Shown here: positions 20,881-55,800 of the stretch, one piece after another
How positions within the stretch are numbered: the stretch's first letter is position 1
Layout of the letters: every line of letters begins with the position of its first letter
From: Phaeosaccion multiseriatum
Lineage: Eukaryota; Protista; Ochrophyta, other classes
Assembly (NCBI GenBank): GCA_965112735.1
Contig: OZ218961.1
Location: forward strand, 1,302,001 to 1,366,000
Direction of reading: 5' to 3'
DNA length: 64,000 nt
Position numbers and translations under genes: made by a program
The notes under the pieces: generated by a model
Seen by the model: the letters and a program-made list of their open reading frames with translations, nothing else
The model's database searches: none
What the model was told of the DNA's origin: nothing

Positions 20881-21325
20881 TGAGCTGGACGCCCTCCGTG
20901 GCGATGTTGAGCGACGGCCTTGGTCAGGTTGACGACATCCTCTATGTTCGTCCACTGCAGCCTGCAGCAGGGGTCCAGGACCCGCCCGTCCTTGGCCTTG
21001 AGAATCCCCTTGCGGACGTAGATACACTCCTCTGCTCTCCTCCTGTTGAGGGACTTGCCTGTGAGCTTGGGCACCGCCCACAAGAGAAGCCGACGCTCGA
21101 CTTCTGGCGTCGGCTTCTCTTGTGGGCGGTGCCCAAGCTCACAGGCAAGCCCCTCAACAGGAGGACAGCCGACGAGTGTATCTACGTCCGCAAGAAGCTT
21201 CTCAAGGCCAAGGACGGGCGGGTCCTGGACCCCTGCTGCAGGCTGCAGTGGACGAACATAGAGGATGTCGTCAACCTGACTAAACAGGCCGTCGCTCAAC
21301 ATCGCCACGGAGGGCGTCCAGCTCA
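20881..21325. repeat. Long fold-back 1: 216/219-bp arms, 10-nt loop (candidate hairpin RNA)
   Basis: 20881-21096 pairs with 21107-21325 with about 8 substitutions and one 3-nt indel. ORFs on both strands encode near-identical peptides. Confidence 0.95.
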
Positions 21326-22561
21326 CCCCGATCGGTGGAGAAGAGCGCGTGAACGGCCCGCCGTCGGCCATTCTGCCTCCTCCTGCGCTTGCCCTTGTTG
21401 CCCTTCTTGAGACTGCCGATGCGCGACCGTTTCCTGTGGTTCACGCACACAGACATTGGTGGTGGGGGGGAAGGGCGAGGAGGAGCAAGGCTGTCAGCGA
21501 GTTTGTTATCGACAGGAGGTACGAGCCAAGCGCTGGCTGGGGAGCTGGGCAACAATCACCCCATCCCTGTTTGTGTTGTTCTACCACATACCATCATCGA
21601 TCATGCCGGAGAAGAAAGTAACGGCGGATTTGGCAAAGTCCGTCTGCGCTGCCTCCTCATCCTCGAGAGTTGGGGCGTCGGACATGGTGTAGCAGAAGAG
21701 CATCCTCCGGACGTGACTGAACCGGTCGGAGACCTTGCTGGAACCGTTGCCAGCGAGGATGCCAAGGATGATGGCCCACAGCTGCACAGTGGGTGGGTGG
21801 AGAGAGAGCGTGGCATGAGGGGGGGGAGGGGCGAGGGCAGCGGCGAGCGGGCCAGCCATGTACTCACGTGGGGGTGGCGTAGGGAGACGACGTAGATGAA
21901 GACCTCGCTCTTTGCTGTGTATGCTGCTGCCGCTGTACCTTCTTCCCACCGCGGCGCTTGCCTCCGACGATACGGAGATCGTCTCGCATGATGCGCATGA
22001 CCCCACGCTCGCTCTCTCCCGCCTTCAATCCCAGCTGAGCCTGGTCGGGACTGATGTAACTACCATCTGCCGCGAGGAGGCCCATGAGGGAGAGGAGCTC
22101 GCTCGCGGCGGAGTTCCCTTTTGCTGCCCAAGGAGTGAAGGGGCGATGGGCGGCGAGGGTCCGTTGGTGGGAACACCTTGCCCACTCTGGCCTCGAGCAC
22201 CATTGACAGCACAAACGAGCTGCTCACAGAAGTGGCCCGCTTGTAGAGCGATGCGGCACAAGTGAAGCTTGAAGTTCTGGAGGCTCAGGTTGGGAAGGAA
22301 GACGGGTCAGCCAGGCAGCTGAGGGATGTTGCATAGCTACTCGAACACACACACAGCCACAGCTAGCTAGTACTCACCAAAGGAGGTCCATGAAGACCAT
22401 ATACTGGCTGGTCATAGGTCTTGTTGGTCCCCCGTGCCTTTCTTCCGTCCTTGGCGTCCTTCTCCTGCTCATCCCCCGTATCGCCGTCGCCATCCTCGTC
22501 GGCGACTTGATGCTGGCTAATCTGCTCGAAGCGTGTCTCCACTTCGCCACAGAAGAAGAGC

Positions 22562-23576
22562 TGTCCTTGCCCCCCCCCACTCATTTGCTGTTCATAGCAA
22601 GGCGCTGGTGGTGCCCCGATTTAACGCCTAGGCATCTCTTGCTGACTCTCCCCCGCCCTCCTTCAGCAGACTTCTCCAGACTTCTCCAGCACGCACAAGC
22701 AGCATATTCATTACGAAGAACAACAGGACGGGCGGCGAGGCTTCTCGGTGCACCATCCAGTATGCGAGGGGCAAGACCAGGGCCATCCCGGAGACGAAGC
22801 AGCATTCCCCCTCCTCCTCCTCGAGCGAGACGTCTTGTTGGGCCACCGTCTGTGCCAACCGTCTTCTTGGGCCAGCCAAGGCTGCCGCGGTGAACCCCGC
22901 CAAGAAGGCGTCCACCGAAGCCAACGCCCGCGAGAGGAGCAACAGCAACAAAACCCCCGTGCGTGCGTGCCGGGTTCCAAAATAAGGGAAACCAATGTTA
23001 CATGGGAACCGCCCTTCAGTCTACAAAAACAAGGGTACACAACAAGAAAGAGGGATTGCGTGAGAGCGAGGCGAGCGGGCAATTACGCTTCGTGCCTTCA
23101 CACACGTACAGATTGGAGGGCGGTTCCCATGTAGCATTGATTGCCCTTGTTTTGGAACCCGGCACGCGCGGGGGTTTTGTTGCTGTTGCTCCTCTCGCGG
23201 GCGTTGGCTTCGGTGGACGCCTTCTTGGCGGGGTTCACCGCGGCATCCTTGGCTGGCCCAAGAAGACCGTTGGCACAGACGGTGGCCCAAGAAGACTGGC
23301 CGCCGGAGCGGGCGAGGACTGGGAGGAGGGGTGATGCTCCTCCGTCTCCGGGATGGCCCGAGTCTTGCCCCGCGCACGCTTGACGGTGCGCCAAGCGCTT
23401 GTGCTGCTGTTGTTCTTCGGAATGAACATGCTGCTTGTGCGTGCTGGAGAAGTCTGGAGAAGTCTGCCGAAGGAGGGCGGGGGAGAGTCAGCAAGAGATG
23501 CCTAGGCGTTAAATGGGGGCATTACCAGCGCCTTGCTACGCACGAACAGCAGCGAATGGGGGGGGGGGCAAGGACA
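22562..23576. repeat. Long fold-back 2: ~460-bp arms whose loop is an 89-nt GT-AG intron (candidate intron-spliced hairpin RNA)
   Basis: 22562-23020 is a diverged inverted copy of 23110-23576. Loop 23021-23109 on minus reads GTACGT...ctcac...ttcttgttgtgtacccttgtttttgTAG. Confidence 0.92.
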
Positions 23577-25370
23577 TGGGTTCCGATAACTACCGCGGCA
23601 GTGTTAGTGTTAGTGTTAGTGCAGCGTTAGTGTTTGACGCACCTGTGTTGTCTCTGCTTCCGCGCGATGAGTGGCTGCGGAGCAACATATCCACGCGAAC
23701 CAAAGGGGTCACAGATTGCGCATCCGCGGAGGCCTCTGTACCATTTGGGGCGGAGAACCAATCGACTTCGCTGCTGGAGTTTTTTTTTTTTTTGAAAACG
23801 TTTTGCTTCTTACAACGGCCGCAATGCCTCTCTTTCAAGCCCACCAAGGCTTTTCTGTGTTGGGGATTGGCGGGGGGGCTCCCATCTGCGTCGCAGTCGC
23901 CCACGCTGTGCTGAAAGGCCAAGTCGAGAGGCTAGCACTGGCGCTTGGCTTGCCATTGCTCACGGAACACGACGTTGCTTCAGACAGACAAGGGCTTCGC
24001 ATCGTGGTCTGGGAGAAGCCCTTCGGTAAGGACAGAGAGGATTTGCACGCCGTCACGAGTCTCCCGAACGTCTGGGTCATTAGCCCTCGGTGCTTCTTGC
24101 ATGCTTGCAAAGAGGCGATCGCGAGAGATGACTACCATTCTCTAAGGATTGGAAGAGGAGGGAATCACCACCGCGTGGCCTTCGTGGAGAAAAGCGACAA
24201 CGCCGCCTACAGCCCCCGCCCAACGAAGACTTGATGGACGTTTCCTCGGACCAAGAGGACGACGAGGAGCTTCTGCCGCGCTTGGAGGAAACAAGCATTG
24301 CGAAGCGTGAGAGAATCGGAGGCACACAAGTAGTACGAGAGCAAGCGTTACGACCGATATGCGGGAGCGGAGGAGGGCGGGGAGCATTCCCATCGACGAT
24401 TCGTTCCCTTGTTCTTCGCCCCTCCGCTGCACAGCCAGGGGCTTTGCCTCGCGGGCCTGCTTCAAGCAAAGGAGGATTGGCTCGCTTCAGGAGCTGCACC
24501 TCCTATCATAGGACTAGTATTCAATGTCATGACCGTTCCTTCCATCCATCACGCCTTTCCGCCGCTCTACGCTCGCTCCGGCCCTGGCTGCTCCTCCGCC
24601 GCGGCATGTAGGCACGTCACGGCTCCTCGCGTCGCTCAGCGCATGGAGTGCTCTAGTCCTGTCTCATGGTCCGCCAATCAAGGGCGTTCAATATTGAAGC
24701 AAGACACGGAGGAGGGAAACATGCCATGTAGTATACAAGAAGAGCGTGGTAGGGGAGGTTCTCCCGTAACTGCGTCAAGCAAAGCTGTGAGATTCAGAGG
24801 CGCGGTAGTAGTTCTTGTGGAGCCAATGTTTTAAGACAGCCACTGCAGGGCCATCAACGCGGCCCACGGCCCACGCACAGCAAAAAAAGCGGACGTTACG
24901 TACATATTTACATAAGTTTGCATAAGGAACTGGTGGAGCTGCTGAGCGAAATAAGCAATGACCTGTAGCCGCTTGCTGCACCGGATTCCGCTGCTTGACC
25001 TGAAGAGGCATCATCCCATCCTACGGGCACTGGCACGCCGCCATCTTCCGAAAGTACATTGTCGTTCGCCCCGACTAGGAGCCACACCATCGAGCTGACC
25101 CTTGTGCTCTGCTGCGCTACAGCACGTCTCTCCTCCGTGCTGGAGCAGTGCCGGGACTCAGGCAGGTTGTTGCCCACCCGTAATCTCTGCGCTGCAGCCC
25201 GTGCCGTCCTCCGTGCTCGAGCTATCGTGCGAAGCGTGGGCTGCTGGGGACTCGTGACCTCTGCGGCCGCTACCAAACAGCACGTGACGTCCTCGCTGCC
25301 ACAACAGCTGTACCGGAACTAAGGTTGCTGATCCTTGTTCTCTCCGCTACAGCATGTGCGGCCCTCCGTC

Positions 25371-28300
25371 CTAGAATGATGCCTGCTGCTCGCTTTGTTT
25401 CGCCCTCAGCTGGTGCATATCCCTCCTGCCTCCTTTGCTGCCTCCGCCCCTTCCCCACCGTATTCCCTGGCTGCCACTCGCGTCTGCCGTCGTGGTGGAG
25501 GCAACGTGGTCCTCCAGAGAAACCAGCCTCGCCATTGAAAGAGTCTCTCTGTCATCCTGCTGAGTCATGGTTGGTGGCCGCCCGTGCGGAGCAGGAGGGG
25601 GGGGGGGGGGCACAGCAGCTGCTGCAGGCCTCCTGCTGGCGGGTAGCTGTGGTGGACACGATACTCACTCACTCCCTCACTCACTCACTCACTCACTCAC
25701 TCACTCACTCACTCACTCACTCACTCACTCACTCACTCACTCGCCCCTTCACTCACTCACTCACTCCACTCACTCCACTCACTTTACTCACTCACTCACG
25801 CACTCACTTACTGACTCACGCACTCACTCACTCACTCACTCACTTACATACTGACTCACGTACTTACTGACTCACTCACTCACTCACCCACTCACTCACT
25901 CACTCACTCACTCACTCACTCACTCACTCACTCACTCACTCACTCACTCACTCACTACCTCACTCACTCAGTCAGTCCCTCACGCACTCACCCACTCACT
26001 CACTCACTCACTCACTCCCTCACTCACTCACGCACTCACTGACGCACGCACGCACTCACATACGCACGCACCGGCGTCTCCAGCTCGAGGGGAGTGGTGG
26101 GGTGCTGCTGGAAGAAGGAGAAGGCGGCGAGGATGTCGCTCATCAACATTTCCGCCAAGTCACGCGAGAAGTTCGCCTTCACCACCACCCGCATGATGGC
26201 CTGGGGGGAGGAGGGGGATGAATGGGTATGAGTGAGTGAGGAGAGGCAGCCAGAGGGGGGGAGGGAGGGAGAGAGGGAGGGAGGGAGAGAGGGACAGGGA
26301 GGGAAGGAGTGAGGGAAGGAGGGAGGGAGAGGGGACGACGAAGAGAGGGACAAAGAGAGGGAGAGGAGGAGAGGGAAGGAGGGAAGGAGAGAAGGTCAGT
26401 TGCGTCAGGGTGCTGGATGAAAATAGAGCACTCATGGCACGAAGCTCTGAGCATCATGACCGGCTCATGCGCTGTGGAGAGTCCTCTTGCGCCTTCGCCC
26501 ACCCTCTCATCCACACCCAGACGCGCACCCACGCCCTCACGCACCCACGCACCCACGCACGCACACGCTCCCACACACACGCCCATACGCACTCACGCAC
26601 TCACGCACTCACGCACCCACGCACGCACACACGCACACGCACTCACCCACTCACGCACACACCCACGCACCCACGCACCCACGCACCCACGCACCCACGC
26701 ACCCACGCACTCACTCAGTCACGCACCCACACACCCTCGCACAAACACACACCATGTCAGTGGCGCCCTGTGGGCACGTGTAGGCCGGAACTATCCAGCC
26801 CTTGTTGCGAAGCTTGTCCTGGAGGTCGAATACGCTGCAGTTGGCGCCAGCGGTGAGACTCCACGCCACCACGGGGATGTGCGCCTTGTCCACGATGGTC
26901 ACCATGCCCTGAGGGGTAAGAGGGAGGGAGGGGGTGTTTCCCATCCAGTACTTATGTTGTAAGTCAGGCCATCCAATGCCATCCTTTGAAGTGAGTGTTT
27001 GTGTGCTCACCGTCTTGACGAGCGACGAGCGCAAGAACTCGGCATTCTCCTGAGTGCGGCGCGTCGCAGCGGCGGGCAAGGGGAGAGGAGCGTGAAGGGA
27101 GGGAAACGTCGTGGGTGAGAAGCAAGTGGAGGGGCGGTGGGCAACAAAGAGGAGGGGCAAAGGCATGATTGGAGCTGCTCACTCACTCACACACTCAATC
27201 GCTCATCACTCGCTCAATCACTCGCTCAATCACTCACGCATGCACTCACTCACTCACTCACTCACTCACTCACTCACTCACTCACTCACCCACTCACCCA
27301 CTCACCCAGTCACCCAGTCACCCAGTCACCCACTCACACTCACTCACTTACTCACTCACTCACTCACCCACTCACTCACTATCTCACTCACTATCTCACT
27401 CACTATCTCACTCACCCACTCACCCACTCACCAACTCACTCACTATCTCACTCACTCACCCAGTCACTCACTATCTCACTCACTCACTCACTATCTCACT
27501 CACCCACCCACTCACCCACCCACCCACTCACCATACAGTTACGCTGATCACATCACGAGAAGAAGAACAGAAGAGCCCCGCCACCGGTAGCGAGAGAAGC
27601 GACAGACAGAGGGAGAGTAACAAGGGGCCGGTGAAGGTGCGACACAAGTGAACAGGAATGGTCTGGAGGGATTGACCGACCTCCACTGAAAGTCAGGCAA
27701 GAAGGAGCCTTCACCTCCACTCGCTTGAGCTGAAAATGCCACCAAAGCAGCTCAGTTAAGCGAAGAGAAAGAGAGAGAGTGGAGGCGCTGTGAGGTGCGT
27801 GAAACTGTATGCCATGCAGATTGCTGTTGGCCCTGGCACAAGCAGGTCGGTTTCTGTAGTCGTACTGGGCAGTCGTGTACGGGTAGTGGCCGTCGCCACC
27901 ACAGACGGCAAGTAGACTGCACCTGAAAATACCCGGACTTGCCCAAGCTTGTCATGGAAGTCGACGCAGTGCAGCACAGATATAGCACAGCACAGCAGTT
28001 GGTGATACAGCACGGAGGGACAGGTATGTAGGGCCGCAGAGCAAGAGACGAAAACCACACGCAACAAACGCGTAGAGAGGGGGGAAGATAAGGGGGAAAG
28101 CTTCGAGTGGGGTCCGAGGACCATCGTGCGTCACAGGACCTCGGCTCGGAAACTGCAACTCGCCACTTCCATCCAGTGCCATCCAGCGTTGCCCTCTGAC
28201 ACTCCGTACTGACTGACCGACTCTTTGGTATTCAGTAATTCACTCGCTTACTGGCTCACGCACTCCCTCAGTCAGTGAGTCATTCAGTCCGTCACTGACT

Positions 28301-28385
28301 TACCAGATGAAGTTATAGTACTGTGCGACGATGTTGCCGGAGCTTTTAGAGAAATTGAGCGTGAAGGACGCCTGGTCACCTCCCA
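25371..28385 (-). pseudogene. GAD: Glutamate decarboxylase 3' exons, copy A (5'-truncated)
   Basis: Exons: 28304-28385 GGDQASFTLNFSKSSGNIVAQYYNFI; LGKSGYFQ; 27011-27049 ENAEFLRSSLVKT; 26753-26908 ...FDLQDKLRNKGWIVPAY; 26072-26200 IMRVVVKANFSRDLAEMLMSDI. No PLP-lysine (SGHK) region found upstream. Confidence 0.85.
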
Positions 28386-29347: not shown

Positions 29348-31277
29348 ATGGAGGAGGGAGCAGAAGAGAACACCTTCCCATCTGGTGCTTCAAAGCGGCG
29401 CTCAGAAGGTCCCAATGACTGGGATGGAGTGAAGGTGCTGACTCTCTTGGCTGCCAATGTGGGCTCCCGCAAGAGTCTGTGGGGCCTGTGCAGAGAGGTG
29501 GATGCAGTAGCGGGGAGGCGACTTGTTCTACACAAAGACGTACCGAAAGCTGTGCAGGAGAGAATGCTACAGATGCTCGAGCATCGGCAACGGTTTGAGC
29601 TCGCGCAATCGGAAGAAGGGGCATCATCTGCTCCTGACGAGGGGCAGAGCCAAGGCCTCCAGGAGGAACAGCAGGAGGGAGGAGGTAACATCCGCCAGAG
29701 GAAATGGTTTCGGGTCATCGCTGTGAGCCTGGGTCTTTCCAGTGGGTATTTTTTCCAGGCCATCTGATGAAGCGAAGAAGCCGGACATTGCCCTAGTTCA
29801 GGAAGGGCTGAGAGTGCTCCCTCCCTCGGTGAAGCGCGTTCGCTTGGGAGATGATTTCAACTGTCGTGGCCTGCGTCTTCCTGACTGGCTGGAGAGTGTA
29901 CATTTTGGGAGAGATTTTTCCGAAGAGGTCAAACTTCCGCACGCCTTGAGAGAATTGAGCTTTGATCCTCAGTCCGAATACAATCGTCCTTTGGATCTCC
30001 CCCCATCGCTGCAGAAGGTATCGTTTGGGTGGAAGTACACACAGCAGACAGATTTCAGTCTGCTGGACGGGCTTACGGAGCTGAAATTTTCCGATGGGTC
30101 GAGGTTTAATCATCCGTTCACCCTGCCTGCCTCTCTTCGGACTCTGCACCTGGGACGGTACTACACGCTGCCCCTATCGGATCTGCCGGACGGGCTGGAG
30201 GAGCTGAAATTTGACTATGGCTCGAGGTTTAATCATCCGTTAACCCTGCCTGCCTCTCTTCGGACTCTGCAGCTGGGGTGGAAGTACACTCAGCCGCTAC
30301 CGGATCTGCCGGACGGGCTCAAGGAGCTGAGATTTGCCTATGACTCGACGTTTAATCATCCGTTGATTCTGCCTGCCTCTCTTCGGACTCTGCAGCTGGG
30401 GAAGATTTATAACCAGCCCCTATCGGATCTGCCGGACGGGCTGGAGGAGCTGAAATTTTCCGGTGGGTCGAGGTTTAATCAACCGTTAACCCTGCCTGCC
30501 TCTCTTCGGACTCTGGAGCTGGGAATGCAGTATAACGAGCCCCTATCGGATCTGCCGGACGGGCTGGAGGAGCTGAAATTTTCCGGTGGGTCGAGGTTTA
30601 ATCATCCGTTAACCCTGCCTGCCTCTGTTCGGACTCTGCAGCTGGGAAAGGAGTATGACCAGCCCCTATCGGATCTGCCGGACGGGCTGGAGGAGCTGAG
30701 ATTTGCCGAGGAGTCCAGCTTCAATCATCCGTTGATTCTGCCTGCCTCTCTTCGGACTCTGCAGCTGGGAAAGATTTATAACCAGCCCCTATCGGATCTG
30801 CCGGACGGGCTGGAGGAGCTGAGATTTGACTTTGGCTCGAGGTTTGATCATCCGTTGATCCTGCCTGCCTCTCTTCGGACTCTGCACCTGGGATGGGAGT
30901 GTAACCAGCCCCTATCGGATCTGCCGAACGGGCTGGAGGAGCTGAGATTTGGCTATGGCTCGAGGTTTGATCATCCGTTGATTCTGCCTGCCTCTCTTCG
31001 GACTCTGCAGCTGGGATGGCAGTATAACCAGCCCCTATCGGATCTGCCGGACGGGCTGGAGAAGCTGGACTTTTCCTATTCCCCGAAGTTTAATCATCCG
31101 TTAACCCTGCCTGCCTCTCTTCGGACTCTGGAGCTGGGAAGGGGGTTTCACCAGCCCCGATTGGATCTGCCTGCAGGTCTGGAGCGACTCAGGGTTTGGG
31201 AGGGATACGAGCTCCCTGCCCAGCTGCCCGAGGGCCTTCAAGTGGAGGTCCACGAAAACTCGGATTCGAGGAGATGA
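29348..31277 (+). CDS. F-box-like + FNIP-repeat protein, copy 1 (apparent +1 frameshift in the T6 run near 29749-29754)
   Basis: N-terminal ORF from ATG 29348 matches copy 2 and continues in another frame from ~29755. ~44-aa repeats of the type LPASLRTLxLGxxYNQPLSDLPDGLEELxFxxxSxFNHPL. Intronless. Confidence 0.8.
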
Positions 31278-36864: not shown

Positions 36865-38583
36865 ATGGAGGGGGGAAAGAGACGAGCAGCAGCCGAGACC
36901 ACCATCGCATCTGGTGCTTCAAGGCGGCGCTCAGAAGGTCTCAATGACTGGGATGGAGTGAAGGTGCTGACCCTCATTTTTGCAAACATGGGCTCCACCA
37001 AGAGTCTGTGGGGCTTGTCCAGAGTGGTGGATGCAGTCGTGGGCAGGCGAGTTGTTCTACACTGCGATGTGCCTACAGCGGTCCAGCAGAGAATACTGAA
37101 GATGCTCGAGCACCAGCAGCGGCTTGAGCTTGAGCCATCTCGGGAAGGAGGAGCATCCTCTGCTCCTGACGAGGGGCAGAGCCAAGGCCTCCAGGAGCAG
37201 CAGCAGCGGGCCCAGCAGTGTGGAGAGGGAGGAGGAGAGATTCCCAACGAAAGGCATTTTCCGGTCAGCGCTGTCACGCTGGGCTTTGCAAAAGCGCGGC
37301 TCTTTTCATCTGGTGATACTCGGTTGGCGGACATTGCCCTTGTCCAGGAAGGGCTGAGAGTGCTCCCTCCCTCGGTGAAGCACGTTCGCTTGGGAGATGA
37401 TATCAACTGTCGTGGCCTGCGTCTTCCTGACTGGCTGGAGAGTGTACATTTTGGGTGGAATTTTTCGGAAGAGGTCAAACTTCCGCACGCCTTGAGAGAG
37501 TTGAGCTTTGATCCTATGAGCATGTACAATCATCCTTTGGACCTCCCCCCATCGCTGCAGAGGGTATCGTTTGGGTGTGAGTACACACAGCAGACAGATT
37601 TCAGTCTGCTGGACGGGCTTACGGAGCTGAAATTTTCCTATGGCTCGAAGTGTGATCATCCGTTAACCCTGCCTGCCTCTCTTCGGACTCTGGTGCTGGG
37701 AGGGGAGTATACCCAGCCCTTATCGGATCTGCCGGACGGGCTCAAGGAGCTGAGATTTGCCTGCTACTCGAAGTTTAGTCATCCGTTGATTCTCCCTGCC
37801 TCTCTTCGGACTCTGCAGCTGGGAAGGGAGTATCACCAGCCCCTATCGGATCTGCCGAACGGGCTGGAGGAGCTGAAATTTTGGCCTGGCTCGAAGTTTA
37901 ATCATCCGTTGATTCTACCTGCCTCTCTTCGGACTCTGCTGCTGGGATATAAGTATAACCAGCCCCTATCGGATCTGCCGGACGGGCTGAAGGAGCTGAG
38001 ATTTGCCGAGGAGTCCAGCTTCAATCATCCGTTCACCGTGCCTGCCTCTCTTCGGACTCTGGAGCTGGGAAACGAGTATAACCAGCCCCTATTGGATCTA
38101 CCGGACGGGCTCAAGGAGCTGAAATTTTTCTATTGCTCGGTGTTTAATCATCCGTTGATCCTGCCTGCCTCTCTTTGGACTCTGGAGCTGGGATATAAGT
38201 ATACCCAGCCCCTATCGGATCTGCCGGACGGGCTCAAGGAGCTGAGATTTTTCGAGTTCTCGGAGTTCAATCATCCGTTAACCCTGCCTGCCTCTCTTCG
38301 GACTCTGGAGCTGGGATATAAGTATAACCAGCCCCTATCGGATCTGCCGGACGGGCTGGAGGAGCTGAGATTTTTCGAGTTCTCGGAGTTCAATCATCCG
38401 TTAACCCTGCCTGCCTCTCTTCGGACTCTGCAGCTGGGAAAGGAGTTTCACCAGCCTCTATCGGATTTGCCTGCAGGTCTGAAGCGACTTGAGGTTTTCG
38501 AGGGAATCGAGCTCCCTGCCCAGCTGCCCGAGGGCCTTGAAGTGAGGAGCTGTAACGTGGATGAGGATTCTGATGATTATTGA
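36865..38583 (+). CDS. F-box-like + FNIP-repeat protein, copy 2 (intact, 572 aa)
   Basis: Uninterrupted ORF. VLTLIFANMGSTKSLWGLSRV is F-box-like and is followed by FNIP-type repeats. Confidence 0.88.
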   Translation: MEGGKRRAAAETTIASGASRRRSEGLNDWDGVKVLTLIFANMGSTKSLWGLSRVVDAVVGRRVVLHCDVPTAVQQRILKMLEHQQRLELEPSREGGASSAPDEGQSQGLQEQQQRAQQCGEGGGEIPNERHFPVSAVTLGFAKARLFSSGDTRLADIALVQEGLRVLPPSVKHVRLGDDINCRGLRLPDWLESVHFGWNFSEEVKLPHALRELSFDPMSMYNHPLDLPPSLQRVSFGCEYTQQTDFSLLDGLTELKFSYGSKCDHPLTLPASLRTLVLGGEYTQPLSDLPDGLKELRFACYSKFSHPLILPASLRTLQLGREYHQPLSDLPNGLEELKFWPGSKFNHPLILPASLRTLLLGYKYNQPLSDLPDGLKELRFAEESSFNHPFTVPASLRTLELGNEYNQPLLDLPDGLKELKFFYCSVFNHPLILPASLWTLELGYKYTQPLSDLPDGLKELRFFEFSEFNHPLTLPASLRTLELGYKYNQPLSDLPDGLEELRFFEFSEFNHPLTLPASLRTLQLGKEFHQPLSDLPAGLKRLEVFEGIELPAQLPEGLEVRSCNVDEDSDDY

Positions 38584-42429: not shown

Positions 42430-45255
42430 CACCAAACCAACCCAACATTTGCAACGACCTTGCTGGCCTCCACAAGATTGAAGTCGTTCGGGGTGGTAGA
42501 GAGACTTGCAAATGAGCATGTTAAGGTGTAGCACATGGGCCTTGAGGAGATGCCCACTTTCGTCCTTGGAGGACTCTGGAAGGCCTCCCAGAACCTCTGT
42601 GATCACTAACCTAGTGATGCATGCCCCCAAGGAGAGAGAGGGAGGGAGGGGACTTGATAATAGAGCAAATGCCATGGTAGATAGAGGGTGACGGTAGACT
42701 CAAAGGGGCTGTGCACCACGTGAGCGACACACAGAAGCACCACCCTGCAGGGGACACAGCCAGGTACACACACATGCACGCCCGTACGCACACACGCTTT
42801 CGCACCTGCAGCTGCTCCATAACAAGCGGGTCGTGCCTGAGCTTCTCCCTCTCTCGCTTGCAGTACGGGTGGTCAAAGGCGACATTGCCTTCGTCTCGAA
42901 GGCCTGTGCGAGGAGACGAAGAAGAGAAGAGAGTCGTTGTTCAAGAAGAAGAGAAGAGAGTCGTTGTTCTGGTGGGCTCAGACTCCCCTCGTTCCAGAGC
43001 GGCCCGTTCCCCAGTCTTCCGGCAACTTCGCCACCATGTCCTCGTGACCCAGATACATCTGCTTGACCTCCCCCTCGTCTCCAGTGTGCGTGCGGACGCC
43101 CACGACCATGATGCGTGTCCCATCATGGATCCTTGTGTCCCTCCCCACCCTGCCCAACAGCTCGTTCAGCGGGTTCAGATTGGGGTGGCACATGTTCACC
43201 TTGAGCTCCCGACGACAGGAGAACCGTGGTGCTTCCAAACCACCGGCACGTTGCCAGTCCGCTTCGGGTCCTCCCGCTTCATGAGGCCGGTCCACTGGGG
43301 GGTGTTGGTGTCGTCCCACTCCCCAATGTAGCACACGGAGAGCATGTTGCACTTCCTCAGCCGCAGAGGTTCGACGCTGCCTTGTCCCACGACAGACTCG
43401 TAAGTGACCCCCCCCCCCTCCAGCAACCCCACACACTCCGACACTTCTTCGGCTGTCAGCCTGTACTCTGTGTACTTGCCCTCCACCCATGTCGTGCGGA
43501 TGCCGCGCACGGCCTCTCCCCCCCCCCCCGCTCTCCCTCTCCCCCTTGCTGCTCTCCCTCTCCCTGCTGCTCTCCCTCTCCCTGCTGCTCTCCCTCTGCC
43601 CCGCCTCGTACACGCGCATGCCCGCCACACACACGGACTCGTTCGCCAGCCGCCGCCGCAACGTCGTCCAAGGGGTTTTGAGGTTGAAAACAAACCTCAC
43701 GGCGGACATGGGAGCGTCCTTTCCCTTCGCCACCATCACCTGCACGGACCCGGAGCCCGCCTTGAGGTTCATGGTCGTCTCCTGTGTGTCCGTCTTGAGC
43801 ATGGCTCGCGCCACGTCCGTCCACACTGGGGACGAGTCCATCTTGCACACTGTCTCCAGCTGTACGCGTGGCCCGGTCTTGTCCAGGAAAGGGCGGGCGC
43901 GGGCGCCTGTGTATAGTGTAGACGGGGGGAGCAGGGACACATCAATTCCTCAGACGCGGCACCAGCAGGGCAACAACAAGGGGAGTAGGTACTCGCTGCC
44001 CCCGCACTTACTTCTCTCAACCATGCTGAGGCCGGTCGCGGTGCCTTTCCGACCGTCAGCTCCCTTGGCGCAGGTAGCTACGCCACATCCGCCGGCTTGA
44101 GCTCTGCTCTGGGTGAGGCGGCCCGGAAGATGGAAAGCGAGGGGGAAGAGCTCGTACCCACCATCATTTGCCGCACTTCGCTCGGGGAAAGTGCAGTTGG
44201 CCACGTCACTCGGCCAGAACGCTCACGTCATCATGGCCGCCTGAGTGCATCAGATGCACACAGGCGGCGATGATGATGTGCATGTCCTGGCCGAGTGACG
44301 TGGCCAACTGCACCTTCCCCGAGCGAAGTGCGTCACCCGATCCGACGACGCGGTGCAAGAGCAGTGCGCAGGTCACCGGCGACACGTGCCCATGGCCCCC
44401 CACCGAAAGAGTCACCCCCGCTACCTCCACCTCTGTGCGGGCCTGGCGGACGAGAGGCGGACGAGAGCACCCTCCTCCCCCGCCTGCAGGAAGACTCCTA
44501 GTCGCTGGTCTCCGCCCTTCTCTTCCCTCCTCGCCCTCCCTACAGCCTCCTCCGCAGCAGCACGCCGAATCACCGCATCCACGGTGCCTTGCACCTGCTG
44601 CTGCAGCTCAGGTGCCAGACTTTCTCGTCGGTTGGCCAGCACGTCCAGGGCCTCCACAAGGCCAGCGTCATAAGCGGATCCTTCTTCCTTGTCTTGCTTG
44701 CCGTCTTGCTGCTGCTGCTGCTGCTGGTGGTGGTGGTGGTGGTGGTGCTGCTGCTGCTGCTGCTGCTGAGGGGAGTCTTGGCTCGGCCCTTTCCCTTCTT
44801 AGAGCTGCTCGTCGTGCTGCTGCTGCTGGGGCTGGTAGTGCTGCTGCTGCTGTTGCTGCTGTTGCTGCTGCTGCTGAGGGGAGTCTTGGCGCGACCCTTT
44901 CCCTTCTCAGAGCTGCTCGTCGTGCTGCTGCTGCCGCTGTCGGACCCTCCACTGTCTCTCTCATCTTCATCGGTGCTTGTACTTGGATCAATCACGCCCG
45001 ATGTAGGAGCTGTAGACGCGAGTGAGCTCATGCGAGTGGTGAGGTCAATCGTTGCCGCTGGAACTCCTGGGGCGGGGGTCAGGTAGATGATGACTAGTGA
45101 GAGCACGCGAAGCAAGGAGAAGCGAGCTGGAGAGGGATCGAGCAGGCAGAGGAGCGGCTAGAGAAAGAGAAGGGAAGGGGAGAGACCACGTCACAGACCG
45201 AGAGGGGGGGGATAGCTACCTGGGCGTCGGAGGCGTCTTCACTCGTGTCCATCTG
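42430..45255 (-). pseudogene. Frameshifted gene of unknown family, apparently running into GAD copy C
   Basis: Protein-like segments switch frames (EALDVLANRRESLAPEL..., VRFVFNLKTPWTTLRRRL..., WVEGKYTEYRLT..., GLRDEGNVAFDHPYCKRE...LQ|gtgcga). Contains fold-back 3. Confidence 0.5.
44172..44332. repeat. Fold-back 3: 80-bp arms around a single central base (pre-miRNA-sized hairpin)
   Basis: 44172-44251 vs 44253-44332, about 8 mismatches, no indels. Confidence 0.93.
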
Positions 45256-47636: not shown

Positions 47637-50563
47637 CAGTAGGGATACTCGGCTGTCTCCTCCTGGGATTGCACGGCTTTCTTCATTTTTGGAAGTTACA
47701 GAGGGAAATTCGGAGCCGAACCCAAGCCCCGCGGCGCCCTTGTATGTCAATTAACCGCCCTGGATGTCAGTAGGACCGAAATTTTCAGTCAATTTTTTTT
47801 CATCGGCTGGGGCGCGTGAGGGAGGAGATGAATACTAGATACAAGGACTATCCCAGACGAAGCGCTTGTGCAAGCTTGAGGAAAACACAGTGAACTCGGG
47901 ATTAGGCAGCTGAGAGCGTGCTCGCAGCAGCTTTGTGGCAAGAATTAGCGGGTGAGCTGCAAAGGTGCGTTTTTCGCCAACCTTGGTTTCGAGAGAGAGA
48001 GAGGACGGAGGGGGGTATACCCATAGAGATCAGCCGTGGGCAAGATAGGATCTCTTCTCCAGGAGTATGCGAAACTTTTCATATGCGTCGCATGCTCTTC
48101 CGCCTCCAGCTCGTCGGCACTTTTGCCCCTGAAGTTAGGGTACTCCACCTTCACAGTTGGATGTCTCTGAGACGTGGACACTGCTCTATTCTACCGATTT
48201 TCAGGGCCCATGAGGGCGTCATCTCGTCCGCAGGACACGTCTGATGACCCCCGTACCGCTGCTGTCCATGGGCGGGGGGCAAGAGGTCTATGGCAGGTCG
48301 TCACCCGAGGTGGCCGAAAAGGTGAGGGCGCACGAGAGGGGGAGAGGGCGTGAGATGGAAGGCTTCGCCTGGCAGTTACGAGCGGGGCAAGAGGGATTAA
48401 CATCACTCATATATAGCCTGGCTTGTGACCAAGTTTTAGCTTCAAAGGTCATAATCCCATGTGCACAATCGCATACGTGTGCTCCCCTCTCTTTTGCCTG
48501 TGAAGGGTCCTTTTTGTGAGGTCATGAGCAGCCGATCCCACGCCCTGTCAGAGCATCGGTCTTGCTCAAGGGGCGTAATACTAACTCCCCTGCCCCCTGT
48601 TATTGCGGGACGTGGGTGGTGGGGCTATCGGGGGGACTTCGACATCTTCTCCCGAGGTCACTGCACAGGTGGCGAAGTATGAGGGTGGAGAGGAAAGGGA
48701 AGGAACCTTCCCGGCAGAGTCAAGGGCGACACAAGGTATGTTGTGGCATCTAGTGTGTGAGTTGTCAGATGTCCAACTTTCAGCTTCAGCGAGCTTAACC
48801 AGACATGGGAAATCACCTCGTGTCCACCTCCCTAATTTTGGCCCCGTCGGTTAGGTCATCACGAGGGTCATTACCGGGGCAGGAGAACGACTGCGGCGAC
48901 CATCCTGCCTCTCTTCAGGGAGCGAGAAGGTAAGGAGCAAGGGGTTCACGAGCGGCAGTGGCCAGACGAGCGGGGGGAAGAGAAGCAGGCGTCCAGATAG
49001 AAGTCAAGCTTATCCGCCTCGTCGTCCACCCCGGGGGACGCCGTTGCTGCACGATCAGCTGCAGCTCCTCTTGGCTACTGCGGATGAGCGTGCTCGTATT
49101 GAAGCCTACCAGCCACGAGTGAGAGAAGCTCAATCAAGCAGCAGCTGGACGCGCCATCGGCTGCCGAGGCGGCCATGGGAGCTGAGCCGGAGAAAGGGGG
49201 GGGGGGTAGCGTGCTGTTGCTGTGGGTGGTGGTGTTCGTCGTGGCACATGGTCGAAAAGCGAGAATGACTCAGGGGCGACAGGACGATGAGCCGCAAGGC
49301 CATACTCAAGTCGCTGACCGCCCTGTATGCAGAGAAAGTGGGGTGGAGGCCGTGGCAGGGGGGTTAGGAGCTGCCAGAGGAGGGCTTGGCGGGCTACCGA
49401 GACGGATTTCGCAGGTAAGACGGAGCCTCGTGCAGCATCTATAGTAGTAGTAGCTGTAGCAGCACCGATAAGGGGAGGAGGGGCAGTGTGTGTACAGTTG
49501 GAGCTGCCCATCCGTGAAATTGGGTTAAAATGACGAATATACACATAGATAGCGTTGTAAATCGCATCCTCGCCAAGGAGAGCATGTAAAGAGTACCAAA
49601 TCGGCGCATGGTCATGAGGTATAGCCTCGCGTTGTATCTGGCCCATATCTATCGTCATACCCTCTCTTCCCCCTCGATCGAGGGTCAGGATGACGACGAA
49701 AAGGGGCCCTTCACACTTGTAAATTCTCTCCCTCACTCTGTAGCTCCTGAAAGGACACTTCGAGCTGCCCAGCACTCAGCAGACTATGTATACCTCAAGT
49801 CTTCTCAAGGGTTTCATATCTCGTGGTCTGCTGGTCGCACACGCTCCTCCCTCTCCTCACCATTTTTGAGGTGAAAACTGCTGCCATATGTGTTTCCATC
49901 TCGCCTCACCCCTTCTGCTCCACAGCACCTGCAATCGCACTCTTAGCTGCTCAACGTCGACTTCCATATGTGGGTCGCAGTCTGCTCAAAGCCATTCCTC
50001 CCTCATGGGCTCTTGCTCGCACACGCTCTTCCCCCACTCCCCCCTTGTTTGAGGCCCAAATTCCCGCCAAAGCAACGGACATTTCAGCTCCACATGTTAG
50101 CCCACTATCTCCTAAGACCGCGCTCCCAGCTTCACATCGGCTATTTGACTACATAATCCGTATTCAGCCCGAAGATTATCACCTCTTGTGTGAGCTACGC
50201 CTCTCTCTTTCTCCCTTGTTCAGGGGCCAAGATCTCGTCAACATAGCAGCACATTTCACCTCCTAAATCGCTCTATACAGACGCAACAATCAGACTTTAA
50301 GCTGCTCAACATCTAGAATACTGTCTTTGCCTCAGATCTCCCGAAGCGCTTCGCCTGTGGTGCTCTGTAGCGTGCGTAATACCTCTTTTCCTGAGCCCAC
50401 TCAAAATGTTGATTCTACTGACATCCAGGGCGGTTAATTGACATACAAGGGCTTCCCTGTTCTGTTGACTTATTACTCCTCCTCCCACCCTGGATCGATC
50501 AACCCTGTGTAGAAGAGAGAAAAAGAAGAAACGAAGCCCTTGCTGCTGCTTCTATTGCGGACC

Positions 50564-52848: not shown

Positions 52849-52891
<43 letters not shown>

Positions 52892-55800
52892 TGCACGGGT
52901 TGTTGCTTCCTCCTGCTCCTCCTGCTGCTCCTCCTGCTCCTCCTCCTCCTGCTGCTGCTCCTGCTCTGGTCGTTGCTTCTCCTCCTTTCTCCTTCTCCCC
53001 CTCCTTCTCTTCCTTTTCCTCCTCCTCCTCCTCCTCCTCCTCCTCCTCCTCCTCCTGCACCACCACCACCACCGCCTCCACCCTTCCCGTTACACTGACC
53101 ACCCACCCCCGTCTGTCATACTGGTGACTCCCACTCCTCTGCCGCATCGCTATACTCCTGCGCACCCCTATATCCTAAATCGAGCCCTACTGACCTGAAT
53201 GTTGAGCTCCCCGATATCGACACTCCTGACCCGTATGCCTACAATATGCATCTCCCTAACCCCTAAAGACTCTACCACACCGACCTCCCTGACCTGTATG
53301 CCTATGATATGGACCTCTCTGACCCGTACACCTACAAATATCGACCTCCCTTCCCCACATGTATTCCTACAATGTATCGACCTGGCCTGACCAATAAACC
53401 TGCATGACCCATATTCCTCCACCTGAAGGTACCCCCGCATCGTGGAGTCGCTTAGAGACAGACAAGTGGCGGCCATTGCTTGTGGGGGGCTCCACAACAT
53501 TGTGTGCATGCAGGATGGTGAGGATGGCAGTGGATGGGGAGGGGAGGGCGAGGAGAGGAGTGTGTGTGTGTGTGTGTGTGTGTCTGAGGGTGTGTCCGTG
53601 TATGGTACGCTCTCTGTCTCGCTTCCGTTCCTCCCTTTGGGCACTACGGGAACATTGCCAGCTCTCTCTCTCTCTGTGTGTGTCTCTCTCACTCTGTGCG
53701 TGCGTATGTGTGCGTCTCTCTCTCTGTGCATGTGTGTGCATGTGTGTGCGAGCAGGGAGCCTGTGGTCGTGGGGTTGCAACGACGATGGAGCGCTGGGGA
53801 GGAGCGGCTCAGAGACACAACCCTTGAGGGTGTCAGAGGTGCTTGGAGATGATAGGTGAGGGAGGAGAGGAAGGGGAGAGGAGAGAAGAGAGATGAGAAG
53901 AGGAGGAGAGCATAGCAGAGGAGAGGAGAGAAGCGAAGAGAGGGGAGAGGAGAAGAGGAGGAGAGCATAGCAGAGGAGAGGAGAGAAGCGAAGAGAGGGG
54001 AGAGGAGAAGAGGAGGAGAGCATAGCAGAGGAGAGAAGCGAAGAGAGGGGAGAGGAGGAAGAGGAGGAGAGCATAGCAGAGGAGAGAAGCGACGAGAGGG
54101 GAGAGGAGAAGAGGAGGAGAGCAAAGCAGAGGAAAGGAGAGAAGCGAAGACAGGGGAGAGGAGAAGAGGAGGAGAGCATAGCAGCATAGCAGAGGAGAGG
54201 AGAGAAGCGAAGAGAGGGGAGAGGAGAAGAGGAGGAGAGAAGCGAAGAGAGAAGAGAACAGGGAGGAACGGAGAAGAGGAGGAGAGTATATCAGAGGGGG
54301 GGAGAGGAGAGGAGAGAAGAGAAGAGGAGGAGGGCATGGTAAAGGAGAGGAGACAAGGGAAGAGGGAGGAAAGGAGAAGAGGAGGAGAGCATAGCAGAGG
54401 AGAGGAGACGAGAGCAAATCAGAAGAGAGGAGAGGAGAGCAAATCAGAAGAGAGAAGAGAAGAGCAAATCAGAAGAGAGGAGAGGAGAGCAAATCAGAAT
54501 AGAGGAGAGGAGAGCAAATCAGAAGAGGTGAGAAGGGAGGGAGGGATAGGAAGAGAGAGAGAGGTTAGGGAGGAGGGAGGGTGAGAGAGGGAAATGGGAG
54601 TGAGAAGGGGAAAGGCAAGAGAGAGAGGGAGGACGGAGGCAGAAGGAGAGACGCAGAGACAGGCAGGCAGAGGGAGAGAGGGAGAGAAAGAGGGAGGGAG
54701 AAAGAGCCCACCCACCTGCTTGCGCTTGCAGGCTCTGGCGCTCTGCCCCGGCCCCGATGTCTCGAACCACTGCTTGCCTTGTTTGTCCCTGTAGGAGCCA
54801 AAGCCGTACACCGTGCCCGACAGACACACGCTCTTCGTCTTTGCTCTCTTTTCCGTGTCGTGTTTCAAGCCTTGTTTGGTACATTGACTCAACTCCTTGC
54901 CCCTCCCCCCTCTCCCTTCCCCTTCCCCTTCCTTCCTCCATCCCCCACTCTCCCGTCCCTCTTCCCTCCCCCCTCTCCCTTCCCCTCCGTTCCTCCATCT
55001 CCCTCTCCTCCCCGCAGTATCGTGCAAGTGGCGGCGGGTGACGTGCAGAGCATGGCAGGTGTGTGTGCGTGTGTGTGATTTTGTGTGCATGTGTGTGTGC
55101 ATGTGTGTGTACGTGTGCCGCTATACGAAATGCCATCTGTAGACTCTCAGGAGGGAAGTGGACAGCACAATGTGACTATTCTTCCCTGAGAAGGAAAGAC
55201 TCTCTCCCTCCCTTGCTCGCTCGTCCTCTCTCCTTCCACCTCCATGTATTCTGCATCCCTTATCTTCTCTCTCTGCCTCCGCCTCTCTCTCTCGATCTCT
55301 CTCTCAACTCTCTCTCGCTGTGTGTGCGTGCGCGTGCGCGCCTTTGCCGATTGCAGTGGGTCTGTCGGGCACGGTGTACGGCTTTGGCTCCTACAAGGAC
55401 AAAGAAGGCAAGCAGTGGTTCGAGACATCGGGGCCGGGGCAGAGCGCCAGAGACTGCAAGCGCAAGCAGGTGGGCTCTTTCTCCCTCCCTCTTTCTCTCC
55501 CTCTCTCCCTCTGCCTGCCCCTCTCTCTGCGTCTCTCCTTCTGCCTCCGTCCCCCCTCTCTCTCTTGCCTTCCCCCCTCTCACTCCATTTCCCTCTCTCA
55601 CCCTCTCTCCCTCCTCCCTAACCTCTCTCTCTCTCTCTCTCTTCCTATCCCTCCCTCCCTTCTCACGCTCCACGTCCAAAACCAACCCACCTTCAACCCC
55701 ACCCCCCACCCCTCCCTACTAAGACCACCCCAATGATCGTGCCGGGTCTGAACGGAGTGGTGGAGGTGGCGTGTGGTGCCTCCTTCAACCTTGCCCTCAC

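What the first reader, a model, noticed from the sequence alone, without database searches (positions are those of the whole stretch)
20881..55666. Four independent local inverted duplications of gene sequence within 35 kb
Seen: fold-backs at 20881-21325, 22562-23576, 44172-44332 and 54528-54825/55360-55666. Each copies the local gene's own exonic sequence, each has diverged arms, and none shows transposon hallmarks. Established: inverted duplication of target-gene fragments is a known route to new plant miRNA/hpRNA genes. Inference: this lineage may have a frequent mechanism that turns genes and pseudogenes into hairpin-RNA loci, and the four cases could represent different stages.
Basis: inference. 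Interest (0 to 1): 0.75.

Follow-up and report, generated by a model that had tools for sequence, protein, structure and literature searches.

The report
Fold-back duplication scars in algal genes
Four real hairpin-shaped inverted copies of gene sequence lie within 35 kb of this alga's genome; they look like scars of a DNA copying or repair error that recurs often here, and nothing yet shows that they make silencing RNA.

Summary
All four fold-backs exist at the stated coordinates. Five randomised copies of the window gave none.

- HP1 (20881-21325): an inverted copy of the adjacent ~220 nt, inserted into a coding exon. Two of three paralogs keep the pre-insertion state. The junctions show 2-nt and 6-nt microhomology and no target-site duplication.
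- HP2 (22562-23576): duplicates the first exon, which carries a USP Cys box, plus its upstream DNA. It sits in the same dead gene copy as HP1.
- HP3 (44169-44335): lies in a second pseudogene.
- HP4 (54528-54829 / 55356-55666): an antisense copy of an RCC1 exon plus intron, placed in the upstream intron of an apparently live gene.

The arms differ by about 4-15%. In HP1 each arm has private substitutions, so this is not an assembly artefact. None is a transposon.

Paralogs on C2 and C16 carry their own, different and younger fold-backs. About 81 kb of other fetched DNA holds at least 9 more. The scan has already noted the same thing in other windows of this genome.

The "frequent mechanism" reading is therefore supported. 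The hairpin-RNA reading is untested. Argonaute, RNase III and RdRP genes exist, but arm differences show no bias towards keeping the stems paired (18 G:U against 20 A:C). Most likely these are neutral template-switch or fold-back repair scars.

The parts
20881..21096 (-). HP1 left arm. This is the original copy of the exon segment. It is coding on the minus strand, in the last exon of a dead copy of a low-copy gene family.
   Evidence: Collinear with paralogs C12:1294xxx, C4 and C2. The reading frame continues through it in the paralogs.
21097..21106 (.). HP1 loop of 10 nt. It is the reverse complement of the 10 nt that follow this point in the paralogs.
   Evidence: Alignments.
21107..21325 (+). 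HP1 right arm. This is the inserted inverted copy, which the paralogs lack at this position (C12up and C4 have no inverted copy at all). Read on the minus strand it brings a stop about 15 codons into the insertion.
   Evidence: The ORF 21280-21555(-) ends inside the insertion.
21592..21784 (-). Upstream exon of the same gene copy, with canonical AG/GT borders. It is highly conserved among three paralogs, with one in-frame 3-nt indel.
   Evidence: Read.
22363..22561 (-). Exon homologous to a paralog exon. The HP2 left arm abuts its 5' side.
   Evidence: BLASTP 38% identity, E = 4e-7. GTGAGT donor at 22362.
22562..23040 (+). HP2 left arm. It is an antisense copy (relative to the gene) of exon 1 plus upstream DNA, and carries a 4-nt insertion that breaks the frame.
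23041..23099 (.). HP2 unpaired centre. It corresponds to the start of intron 1 of the right-arm copy.
   Evidence: the repeat finder gives 87 nt between the innermost arm segments.
23100..23576 (-). HP2 right arm. It holds an intact exon-1-like ORF (23394 to 23110) that ends in a USP Cys-box motif followed by a GTACGT donor, plus upstream DNA.
   Evidence: The only PDB sequence matches are USP15 and Ubp6, at the Cys box, E about 1.
44169..44251 (+). HP3 left arm, the inverted copy.
44253..44335 (-). HP3 right arm. It is coding sequence of a pseudogene on the minus strand and is homologous to the C16 paralog.
54528..54829 (-). HP4 left arm. It is an antisense copy of an RCC1 exon plus the start of the following intron, and it lies in the upstream intron.
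55019..55060 (+). Small RCC1 exon lying in the 526-nt spacer between the HP4 arms.
   Evidence: AG/GT borders and a blade-like peptide read.
55356..55666 (+). HP4 right arm. It comprises the RCC1 exon 55356-55472 in sense orientation and 194 nt of the CT-rich downstream intron.
   Evidence: RCC1 Pfam matches flank it on both sides.

Best explanation
The four structures are real, separate mutational scars. Each formed when DNA synthesis, at a stalled fork or a resected break, switched to the complementary strand. It copied tens to hundreds of bases backwards, then rejoined the original strand at a short homology. In HP2 and HP3 some intervening sequence was probably lost as well.

This happens often in this genome. 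The products persist where they cost nothing. Two lie in a dead copy of a multicopy orphan gene that starts with a USP-like exon (HP1, HP2). One lies in a second pseudogene (HP3). One lies in an intron of RCC1 (HP4). The arms then decay by ordinary substitutions and small indels.

Shown: the structures; their local origin; the pre-insertion state and junctions of HP1; their different ages; their recurrence in paralogs and in flanking DNA.

Inferred: the enzymology (replicative template switch versus hairpin-primed break repair), and neutrality.

If transcribed, each would form a long double-stranded RNA. The genome has Argonaute, RNase III and RdRP genes, so small RNAs could arise as a by-product. 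That step is possible but unshown.
For: 1. HP1 pre-insertion state. Paralogs C12:1294xxx and C4 run straight from the left arm into the sequence that follows the right arm.

2. HP1 junctions. The inserted copy begins with the reverse complement of the next 10 nt of the ancestral sequence, and the two sequences overlap by 2 nt (GC) at that junction. It ends in AGCTCA, shared with the resumption site. The resumption site and the reverse complement of the left boundary agree at 9 of 10 positions, which means a short inverted repeat was already there. There is no target-site duplication.

3. HP1 age. Both arms share derived states against all paralogs, and each arm has private changes. The event is therefore local, old and not an artefact.

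4. Independent events in paralogs. The C2 paralog has a different inverted-plus-tandem triplication of the same exon, with copies 98.5-100% alike. The C16 paralog of the HP3 gene has a larger fold-back, with arms of about 364-382 nt at 94-99% and a 7-nt loop. Its centre lies 83 nt further into the gene.

5. More palindromes in DNA fetched for other reasons:
- L030 1792-4953 holds at least 5.
- L031 5177-5777 has 291-nt arms at 100%.
- Others lie at L031 6001-6186, L032 872-966 and L033 7280-7416.

6. The host genes are broken.
- The window copy has 4-nt indels where C12up keeps a 263-aa ORF.
- The HP3 gene has a frameshift and lacks about 340 nt or more relative to C16.

7. No sign of stem maintenance: 18 G:U against 20 A:C. 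In HP4 all four exon differences are non-synonymous when the left-arm copy is read in the exon's frame. That fits one constrained copy and one free copy, though there is no outgroup to show which arm changed.

8. The mechanism class is established. Template switching creates whole hairpins in one event (PMC10710096). Fold-back inversions arise from single-stranded DNA hairpins at breaks (PMC7467729).
Against: - The density estimate rests on about 145 kb, part of which was chosen as neighbours of paralogs.
- HP2 does not fit a simple single-age neutral model. Arm identity is mosaic (about 97%, 75%, 98% and 89%), and all 6 differences across the Cys-box codons are synonymous.
- Relatives of the HP2 exon at C16 and C3 also appear as convergent inverted pairs. 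This hints at inheritance or a hotspot.
- Pre-event states for HP2, HP3 and HP4 are not available, so their junctions are not reconstructed.
- Neutrality is inferred from small numbers.
Confidence: 0.78

Rival explanations
1. The hairpins are working or nascent hairpin-RNA, siRNA or proto-miRNA genes. They are transcribed with their host genes and diced. The products silence the parent gene family (HP1, HP2, HP3) or tune RCC1 (HP4). The high birth rate would be exploited as a source of regulators or as defence against a multicopy, possibly selfish gene family.
For: - Each hairpin lies in a transcription-unit orientation and folds very strongly.
- The genome encodes a Piwi-domain protein, three RNase III loci and an RdRP.
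- The hairpins share long exact matches with possible trans targets: HP1 shares 63, 31 and 22 nt with its three paralogs, HP3 shares 20 nt with the open C16 paralog, and the HP4 left arm shares 48 nt with the RCC1 exon.
- Inverted duplication of target genes is an accepted route to plant MIR genes (discussed in PMC2582634). Template switching is an accepted route to new miRNA hairpins (PMC10710096).
Against: - No expression or small-RNA data were available.
- There is no wobble bias in arm differences and no Rfam match.
- The arms carry indels and decay at uneven rates. The hosts are mostly dead genes.
- An efficient RNAi trigger against an RCC1 exon inside the RCC1 pre-mRNA should be harmful, yet it has persisted to about 4% divergence.
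- Equally many fold-backs occur in unrelated flanking DNA.
Confidence: 0.14
2. This rival concerns HP2 only. HP2 is not a local event of this window. It is a copy of an older palindromic module, the first exon of a USP-like gene facing its own inverted copy, that is shared by several dispersed members of a multicopy gene family. Gene conversion between arms, or from functional paralogs, keeps the two arms similar.
For: - Searching the exon-1 peptide against the genome gives weak hits as convergent inverted pairs. One pair is at C16:1637088-1637186(+) / 1638078-1638200(-). The other is at C3:1245354-1245479(+) / 1245488-1245604(-). In both, the turn comes just after the Cys box, as in the window.
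- The C16 pair lies about 12 kb from the HP3 paralog, in the same order as in the window. This suggests an old segmental duplication.
- Arm identity is mosaic, and differences across the Cys box are synonymous only. Conversion tracts would produce this pattern.
Against: - The hits are short (33-42 aa, 46-55% identity, E = 0.004-0.06).
- No DNA-level match to HP2 exists elsewhere in the genome.
- The other loci could not be fetched, so their arms and turning points were not seen.
- Recurrent independent fold-backs are demonstrably common here.
Confidence: 0.22
3. The fold-backs are artefacts of whole-genome amplification chimeras or of fold-back long reads that entered the assembly.
For: Both processes are known to make inverted junctions with short microhomology. 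Several palindromes in the flanking loci are 99-100% perfect.
Against: - The four arm pairs differ by 4-15%, mostly by substitutions.
- In HP1 each arm has private changes, polarised by three paralogs.
- An artefact would give identical arms.
Confidence: 0.03
4. The hairpins are foldback or MITE-type transposons, or the terminal inverted repeats of such elements.
For: They have long inverted arms and little internal sequence. The HP4 arm ends resemble a dispersed GA-rich repeat.
Against: - HP2 is unique in the genome. HP1 and HP3 match only their gene paralogs.
- Each arm is a copy of the adjacent gene sequence.
- The reconstructed HP1 site has no target-site duplication.
- The GA-rich matches to HP4 are simple-repeat similarity at 72-78%.
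Confidence: 0.03

Closest known systems
Template-switch mutations at replication forks (four-point model; primate hairpin and miRNA births, PMC10710096; great-ape survey, PMC7954356)
   Same: A nearby segment is copied in reverse complement in one event. This produces a ready-made hairpin, with departure and return at short homologies. HP1 fits this exactly and can be reconstructed from paralogs.
   Different: From my own knowledge of that literature, not checked here, the primate events are mostly tens of bases long. Here the arms are 83 to about 480 nt. HP2 and HP3 probably involve loss of sequence as well. The density appears far higher.
Fold-back inversions from single-stranded DNA hairpins at breaks (yeast, PMC7467729; human, PMC3907307)
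   Same: Inverted duplication occurs around a short unpaired centre, seeded by a small pre-existing inverted repeat. Small loops (1-10 nt in HP1 and HP3; 7-19 nt in several of the young fold-backs of the fetched loci, up to 80 nt in others) match the class that Mre11 and Sae2 suppress in yeast.
   Different: The yeast and human events are chromosome-scale, make dicentrics and need secondary rearrangements. Here the products are sub-kilobase, interstitial and stably inherited.
Inverted triplications (DUP-TRP/INV-DUP, PMC11293582; origin-dependent inverted-repeat amplification, PMC4689423)
   Same: The C2 paralog has an inverted copy plus two direct copies of the same exon segment, which needs iterative switches.
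   Different: The scale here is about 140-190 nt per copy, against kilobases to megabases.
Plant MIR and hairpin-RNA genes born by inverted duplication of target genes (model discussed in PMC2582634)
   Same: Gene-derived long hairpins show extended complementarity to the parent or to paralogs, and lie in a transcribed context.
   Different: No small RNAs, processing or target repression are shown here. There is no evidence of selection on the stems. Most hosts are pseudogenes.

Membership tests
Template-switch / fold-back inverted duplication (mutational class) | The inverted copy lies next to its own source sequence. | tested here: met
   All four arm pairs are local, with spacers of 1-526 nt. 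The HP1 arms are sister sequences relative to the paralogs.
Template-switch / fold-back inverted duplication (mutational class) | A related sequence preserves the state before the event. | tested here: met
   Met for HP1. Paralogs C12up and C4 lack the inverted copy and are collinear across the site. No such reference exists for HP2 or HP4. For HP3 the C16 paralog shows the uninterrupted reading frame but has its own fold-back.
Template-switch / fold-back inverted duplication (mutational class) | Short homology at the switch points and no target-site duplication. | tested here: met
   HP1 has a 2-nt GC overlap at the turn and 6-nt AGCTCA at the return (9 of 10 with flanks). Ten nt of the original are replaced and there is no duplication of the target. 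This was not testable for the other three.
Hairpin-RNA / proto-miRNA gene born by inverted duplication | The hairpin is transcribed and yields Dicer-type small RNAs. | not testable with these tools
   No transcript or small-RNA data.
Hairpin-RNA / proto-miRNA gene born by inverted duplication | RNAi machinery is present in the genome. | tested here: met
   Piwi domain at C13:419594-420865. RNase III at three loci. RdRP at C1:3767137-3770084.
Hairpin-RNA / proto-miRNA gene born by inverted duplication | Selection keeps the stem paired, seen as compensatory or wobble-compatible differences or as conservation. | tested here: not met
   18 G:U against 20 A:C mismatches on the transcribed strand, pooled over the four. 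Arms contain many indels. No orthologues were available for covariation.
Foldback / MITE transposon | Multiple dispersed copies with target-site duplications. | tested here: not met
   HP2 is unique. HP1 and HP3 occur only in gene paralogs. HP4 matches only simple-repeat look-alikes. HP1 has no target-site duplication.
Ubiquitin-specific protease (Pfam UCH, PF00443), for the gene hit by HP2 | A profile match to the catalytic domain, covering the Cys and His boxes. | tested here: inconclusive
   PF00443 gives no match in the window even at E <= 10, and Pfam finds nothing on the exon. However, the only three PDB sequence matches are USP15 and Ubp6, aligned at the Cys box, with E about 1.
RCC1 repeat protein (PF00415), for the gene hit by HP4 | RCC1 repeat profile matches in flanking exons. 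| tested here: met
   PF00415 at E = 6e-6 upstream (53398-53856) and E = 5e-9 downstream (55622-55975). The duplicated 39-aa exon alone gives no match.

The most novel reading that the evidence does not exclude
This stramenopile-like alga may make short fold-back inverted duplications at an exceptional germline rate, on the order of 60-110 per Mb in the DNA seen here. An altered hairpin-processing or break-repair pathway could be the cause. The stream of gene-derived long hairpins would feed its Argonaute/Dicer/RdRP system. Dead copies of a multicopy, possibly selfish USP-like gene family (HP1, HP2) would then act as natural hairpin triggers that silence the family. That would be a hairpin-based analogue of a piRNA cluster, and a living example of how hairpin-RNA and miRNA genes are born.
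Probability: 0.12. Interest if true: 0.8.

Novelty: new member of a known kind. Interest (0 to 1): 0.5.

Why it matters
Long near-perfect palindromes are unstable and rare in most genomes. A lineage in which they arise and persist this often would be a natural system for two questions. The first is how cells process hairpin-forming DNA. The second is whether template switching really supplies the raw material for new hairpin-RNA or miRNA genes. HP1 is a clean example that can be reconstructed from paralogs, with both junctions resolved.

There is also a practical point. These scars disrupt exons and sit in introns of live genes such as RCC1. Gene models and pseudogene calls in this genome need to take them into account.

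Tried and rejected
**Steps that were blocked**
- Genome-wide sampling. I planned 100 random 10-kb stretches. I did not try another route, so no genome-wide density was measured.
I therefore could not inspect the inverted Cys-box pairs at C16 and C3, or search for Mre11/Sae2-type genes.

**Naming the gene families**
- Pfam on 25 exon or ORF pieces around HP1, HP2 and HP3 and on the paralogs gave nothing usable.
- The ESM Atlas search on the paralog tail exon gave no usable hit.
- Pfam UCH over the whole genome found about 25 USP loci but none in the window.
- I left the gene families unnamed. The costly protein searches were not spent on them, because the verdict does not depend on the names.
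Exons were searched separately by reference.

**Other negative results**
- Rfam over the window gave no match.
- I considered whether the HP1 insertion could be spliced out in frame. A GTGAGC donor and a CAG acceptor do bracket it. I dropped the idea because the gene copy has other frameshifts.
- I considered whether HP4 came from an RNA intermediate, since its inner boundary coincides with the exon start. I rejected this because the copy runs on into the downstream intron.
- An earlier-notes search by sequence and by USP-related words returned nothing.

Full report
**Setting.** The window is C12:1302001-1366000 of a 67.1-Mb, 22-contig assembly. GC content is about 58%. The DNA is rich in microsatellites and satellites and has spliceosomal GT-AG introns. 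Earlier notes of this scan call the organism a GC-rich, stramenopile-like alga.

**Observation.** All four fold-backs are present at the stated coordinates.

| Fold-back | Arms | Centre | Arm comparison |
|---|---|---|---|
| HP1 | 20881-21096 / 21107-21325 | 10-nt loop | 212 matches, 14 mismatches |
| HP2 | 22562-23576 | spacer about 87 nt | 433 matches, 45 mismatches, 16 indels |
| HP3 | 44169-44251 / 44253-44335 | 1-nt loop | 89% in the core; 82 matches, 15 mismatches over the extended arms |
| HP4 | 54528-54829 / 55356-55666 | 526 nt apart | 301 matches, 12 mismatches plus a few indels |

Five Markov-1 random windows gave no comparable inverted repeat. Predicted RNA folds run from -152 to -874 kcal/mol, with z from -25 to -57. 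The rest of the window holds only low-complexity inverted pairs.

**HP1.**
- *Context.* The hairpin lies in a unit of about 2 kb (20263-22307). The unit has three paralogs in the genome: C12:1294119-1295587, C2:1675008-1676807 and a truncated copy at C4:3435558-3436516.
- *Gene.* The gene runs on the minus strand. Exon 21784 to 21592 has AG/GT borders and is nearly invariant among copies, with one in-frame 3-nt indel. In the paralogs the last exon reads straight through the segment that forms the HP1 left arm.
- *Pre-insertion state.* Paralogs C12up and C4 lack the right arm. They pass directly from the end of the left arm to the sequence that follows the right arm in the window.
- *Junctions.* The inserted copy starts with the reverse complement of the next 10 nt of the ancestral sequence. 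A palindromic TCGA sits at the turn, and the two sequences overlap there by 2 nt (GC). The copy ends in AGCTCA, which is also the resumption site. The resumption site and the reverse complement of the left boundary agree at 9 of 10 positions, so a short inverted repeat about 216 nt apart was already there and probably guided the switch. There is no target-site duplication.
- *Age and origin.* Both arms share derived states against all paralogs, including a 4-nt insertion. Each arm also has private substitutions. The copy was therefore made from the neighbouring sequence, long enough ago to reach about 6% divergence. It cannot be an assembly or amplification artefact.
- *Effect.* Read on the minus strand, the insertion brings a stop about 15 codons in. 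The window copy also has 4-nt indels where C12up keeps one 263-aa ORF. This gene copy is dead.

**HP2.**
- *Right arm.* On the minus strand the right arm carries an open exon-1-like ORF (23394 to 23110). It ends in GFQNKGNQCYMGTALQS and is followed by a GTACGT donor.
- *USP evidence.* The only PDB sequence matches at E <= 10 are USP15 and Ubp6, aligned on their Cys box with E about 1. Pfam does not reach significance.
- *Left arm.* The left arm is the antisense copy, with a 4-nt insertion that breaks the frame. It ends at 22562. That point is directly against an exon (22561 to 22363) homologous to a paralog exon (E = 4e-7). The position could be a splice acceptor. It could equally be a rearrangement break that removed the rest of intron 1 and the start of exon 2.
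- *Uniqueness.* HP2 has no DNA match elsewhere in the genome.
- *Two features that do not fit simple neutral decay.* Arm identity is mosaic, at about 97%, 75%, 98% and 89%. All six differences across the 17 Cys-box codons are synonymous, while two differences further upstream are non-synonymous. Gene-conversion tracts, between arms or from a functional paralog, would explain both features. This is an inference.
- *Possible relatives.* The exon-1 peptide finds weak relatives as convergent inverted pairs at C16:1637088-1638200 and at C3:1245354-1245604. It also finds single hits near weak UCH His-box matches on C1. I could not fetch those loci.
- *Family.* Earlier notes describe a multicopy spliced gene family in this genome with a small USP-like head and a LAGLIDADG-like tail. 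One member lies 6.4 kb before this window, which is the C12up paralog. This agrees with what I see: a Cys-box exon at the 5' end and a motif resembling LAGLIDADG in exon 21784-21592. I did not test the nuclease reading.

**HP3.**
- *Coding sequence.* The right arm is coding sequence on the minus strand. The C16 paralog (L033) has one long open frame through the homologous region.
- *Damage to the window copy.* Relative to C16, the window copy has a frameshift and a 108-nt insertion. It lacks about 340 nt or more of the gene next to the fold-back. It is a pseudogene.
- *The paralog's own fold-back.* C16 carries a larger, younger fold-back at 5162-5525 and 5533-5914, with 94-99% identity and a 7-nt loop. 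Its centre lies 83 nt further along the gene. This is either an independent event or an older palindrome revised by central deletion. With only two loci I cannot tell which.

**HP4.**
- *Arms.* The right arm is an RCC1 exon (55356-55472, sense) plus 194 nt of the CT-rich downstream intron. The left arm is its antisense copy in the upstream intron.
- *Spacer.* A 42-nt exon (55019-55060) lies in the spacer.
- *Host gene.* RCC1 repeat matches flank the structure on both sides, so the host gene appears to be alive.
- *Differences.* All four exon differences are non-synonymous when the left-arm copy is read in the exon's frame. That fits one constrained copy and one free copy, though without an outgroup I cannot tell which arm changed.
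- *Repeat similarity.* The GA/CT-rich outer arm resembles a genome-wide simple repeat at only 72-78%.
- *Possible consequence.* In the pre-mRNA the arms could sequester the exon and its donor, or favour back-splicing. This is speculation.

**Is this a general process?**
- *Paralogs.* The C2 paralog of the HP1 gene has its own inverted-plus-tandem triplication of the same exon, with different junctions and copies 98.5-100% alike. The C16 paralog has its own fold-back, as described above.
- *Flanking DNA.* In the roughly 81 kb fetched as flanks and for other reasons, I found at least 9 further palindromic centres unrelated to my queries. Arms are 40-291 nt, at 94-100% identity, with loops of 9-80 nt. 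At least five lie within 3.2 kb on C4.
- *Rough density.* This gives 60-110 per Mb. The DNA was not a random sample.
- *Other windows.* The scan's notes list many similar fold-backs in other windows of this genome. Follow-ups there also read them as repair or replication scars in dead genes. So this has been found before on other DNA of the same genome. I treat those notes as leads only.
- *What I could not do.* My planned random sample of 1 Mb could not be fetched.

**Function.**
- *Machinery.* The genome has one Piwi-domain gene, three RNase III loci and one RdRP. Dicing of transcribed hairpins is therefore feasible.
- *Possible targets.* HP1 shares exact runs of 22-63 nt with its paralogs. 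HP3 shares 20 nt with the open C16 copy. The HP4 left arm shares 48 nt with the RCC1 exon.
- *No sign of selection on the stems.* Transition differences give 18 G:U against 20 A:C on the transcribed strands. Indels are frequent. Rfam finds nothing. The hairpins sit where neutral insertions are expected to survive.
- *Reading.* I therefore read them as scars. They belong to the known class of template-switch or fold-back mutations (PMC10710096, PMC7954356, PMC7467729, PMC3907307). Any small-RNA output is an open possibility.

**Limits.** The gene families of HP1/HP2 and HP3 remain unnamed. No reads, transcripts or small RNAs were available. Junctions of HP2, HP3 and HP4 are not reconstructed.

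Noticed in passing
L031:8002-8460 (C2:1676002-1676460): The C2 paralog of the HP1 gene carries one inverted and two direct copies of the same exon segment. The copies are 98.5-100% alike and the junctions differ from those of HP1. It is a young, independent, multi-switch event.
   Followed up: yes
L033:5162-5914 (C16:1650162-1650914): The C16 paralog of the HP3 gene has a larger, younger fold-back, with arms of about 364-382 nt at 94-99% and a 7-nt loop. One reading frame stays open through both arms.
   Followed up: yes
L030:1792-4953 (C4:3440792-3443953): A cluster of at least five palindromes and inverted pairs lies within 3.2 kb. Arms reach 257 nt at 99-100% identity, with loops of 9-80 nt. 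The cluster is unrelated to my queries.
   Followed up: partly
L031:5177-5777 and 6001-6186 (C2:1673177-1674186): Two near-perfect palindromes lie 0.8-1.8 kb upstream of the C2 paralog. Their arms are 291 nt at 100% and 86 nt at 99%. This is the same relative position as HP2 in the window, but there is no sequence similarity to HP2.
   Followed up: partly
C16:1637088-1638200 and C3:1245354-1245604 (coordinates only): Weak protein-level relatives of the HP2 Cys-box exon occur as convergent inverted pairs at both loci. The turn comes just after the Cys box. The DNA could not be fetched.
   Followed up: no
window 22972-23022 and 23110-23160: All six differences between the two arms across the 17 Cys-box codons are synonymous third-position changes. 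Neighbouring arm segments are either about 98% identical or about 75% with indels.
   Followed up: partly
window 47736-47789 and 50399-50452: A 54-nt inverted repeat at 91% brackets 2.6 kb between two genes. It looks like terminal inverted repeats, but no transposase-like ORF was evident.
   Followed up: partly
window 57321-57617 and 57829-57959: Two trinucleotide-repeat tracts lie in opposite orientation, 83-89% complementary over 120-133 nt. This is an inverted microsatellite pair.
   Followed up: no
window 18360-20486 and 25659-26000; also L027 3600-7400 and L031/L032 9000-11600: Long GTGAGTGA-type satellite arrays flank the HP1/HP2 pseudogene and also its paralogs. The gene copies therefore sit in similar satellite-rich surroundings.
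   Followed up: no
window 29742-31277 and 36865-38583: Two large FNIP-repeat ORFs (Pfam PF05725, E = 5e-84 and 7e-61).
   Followed up: no
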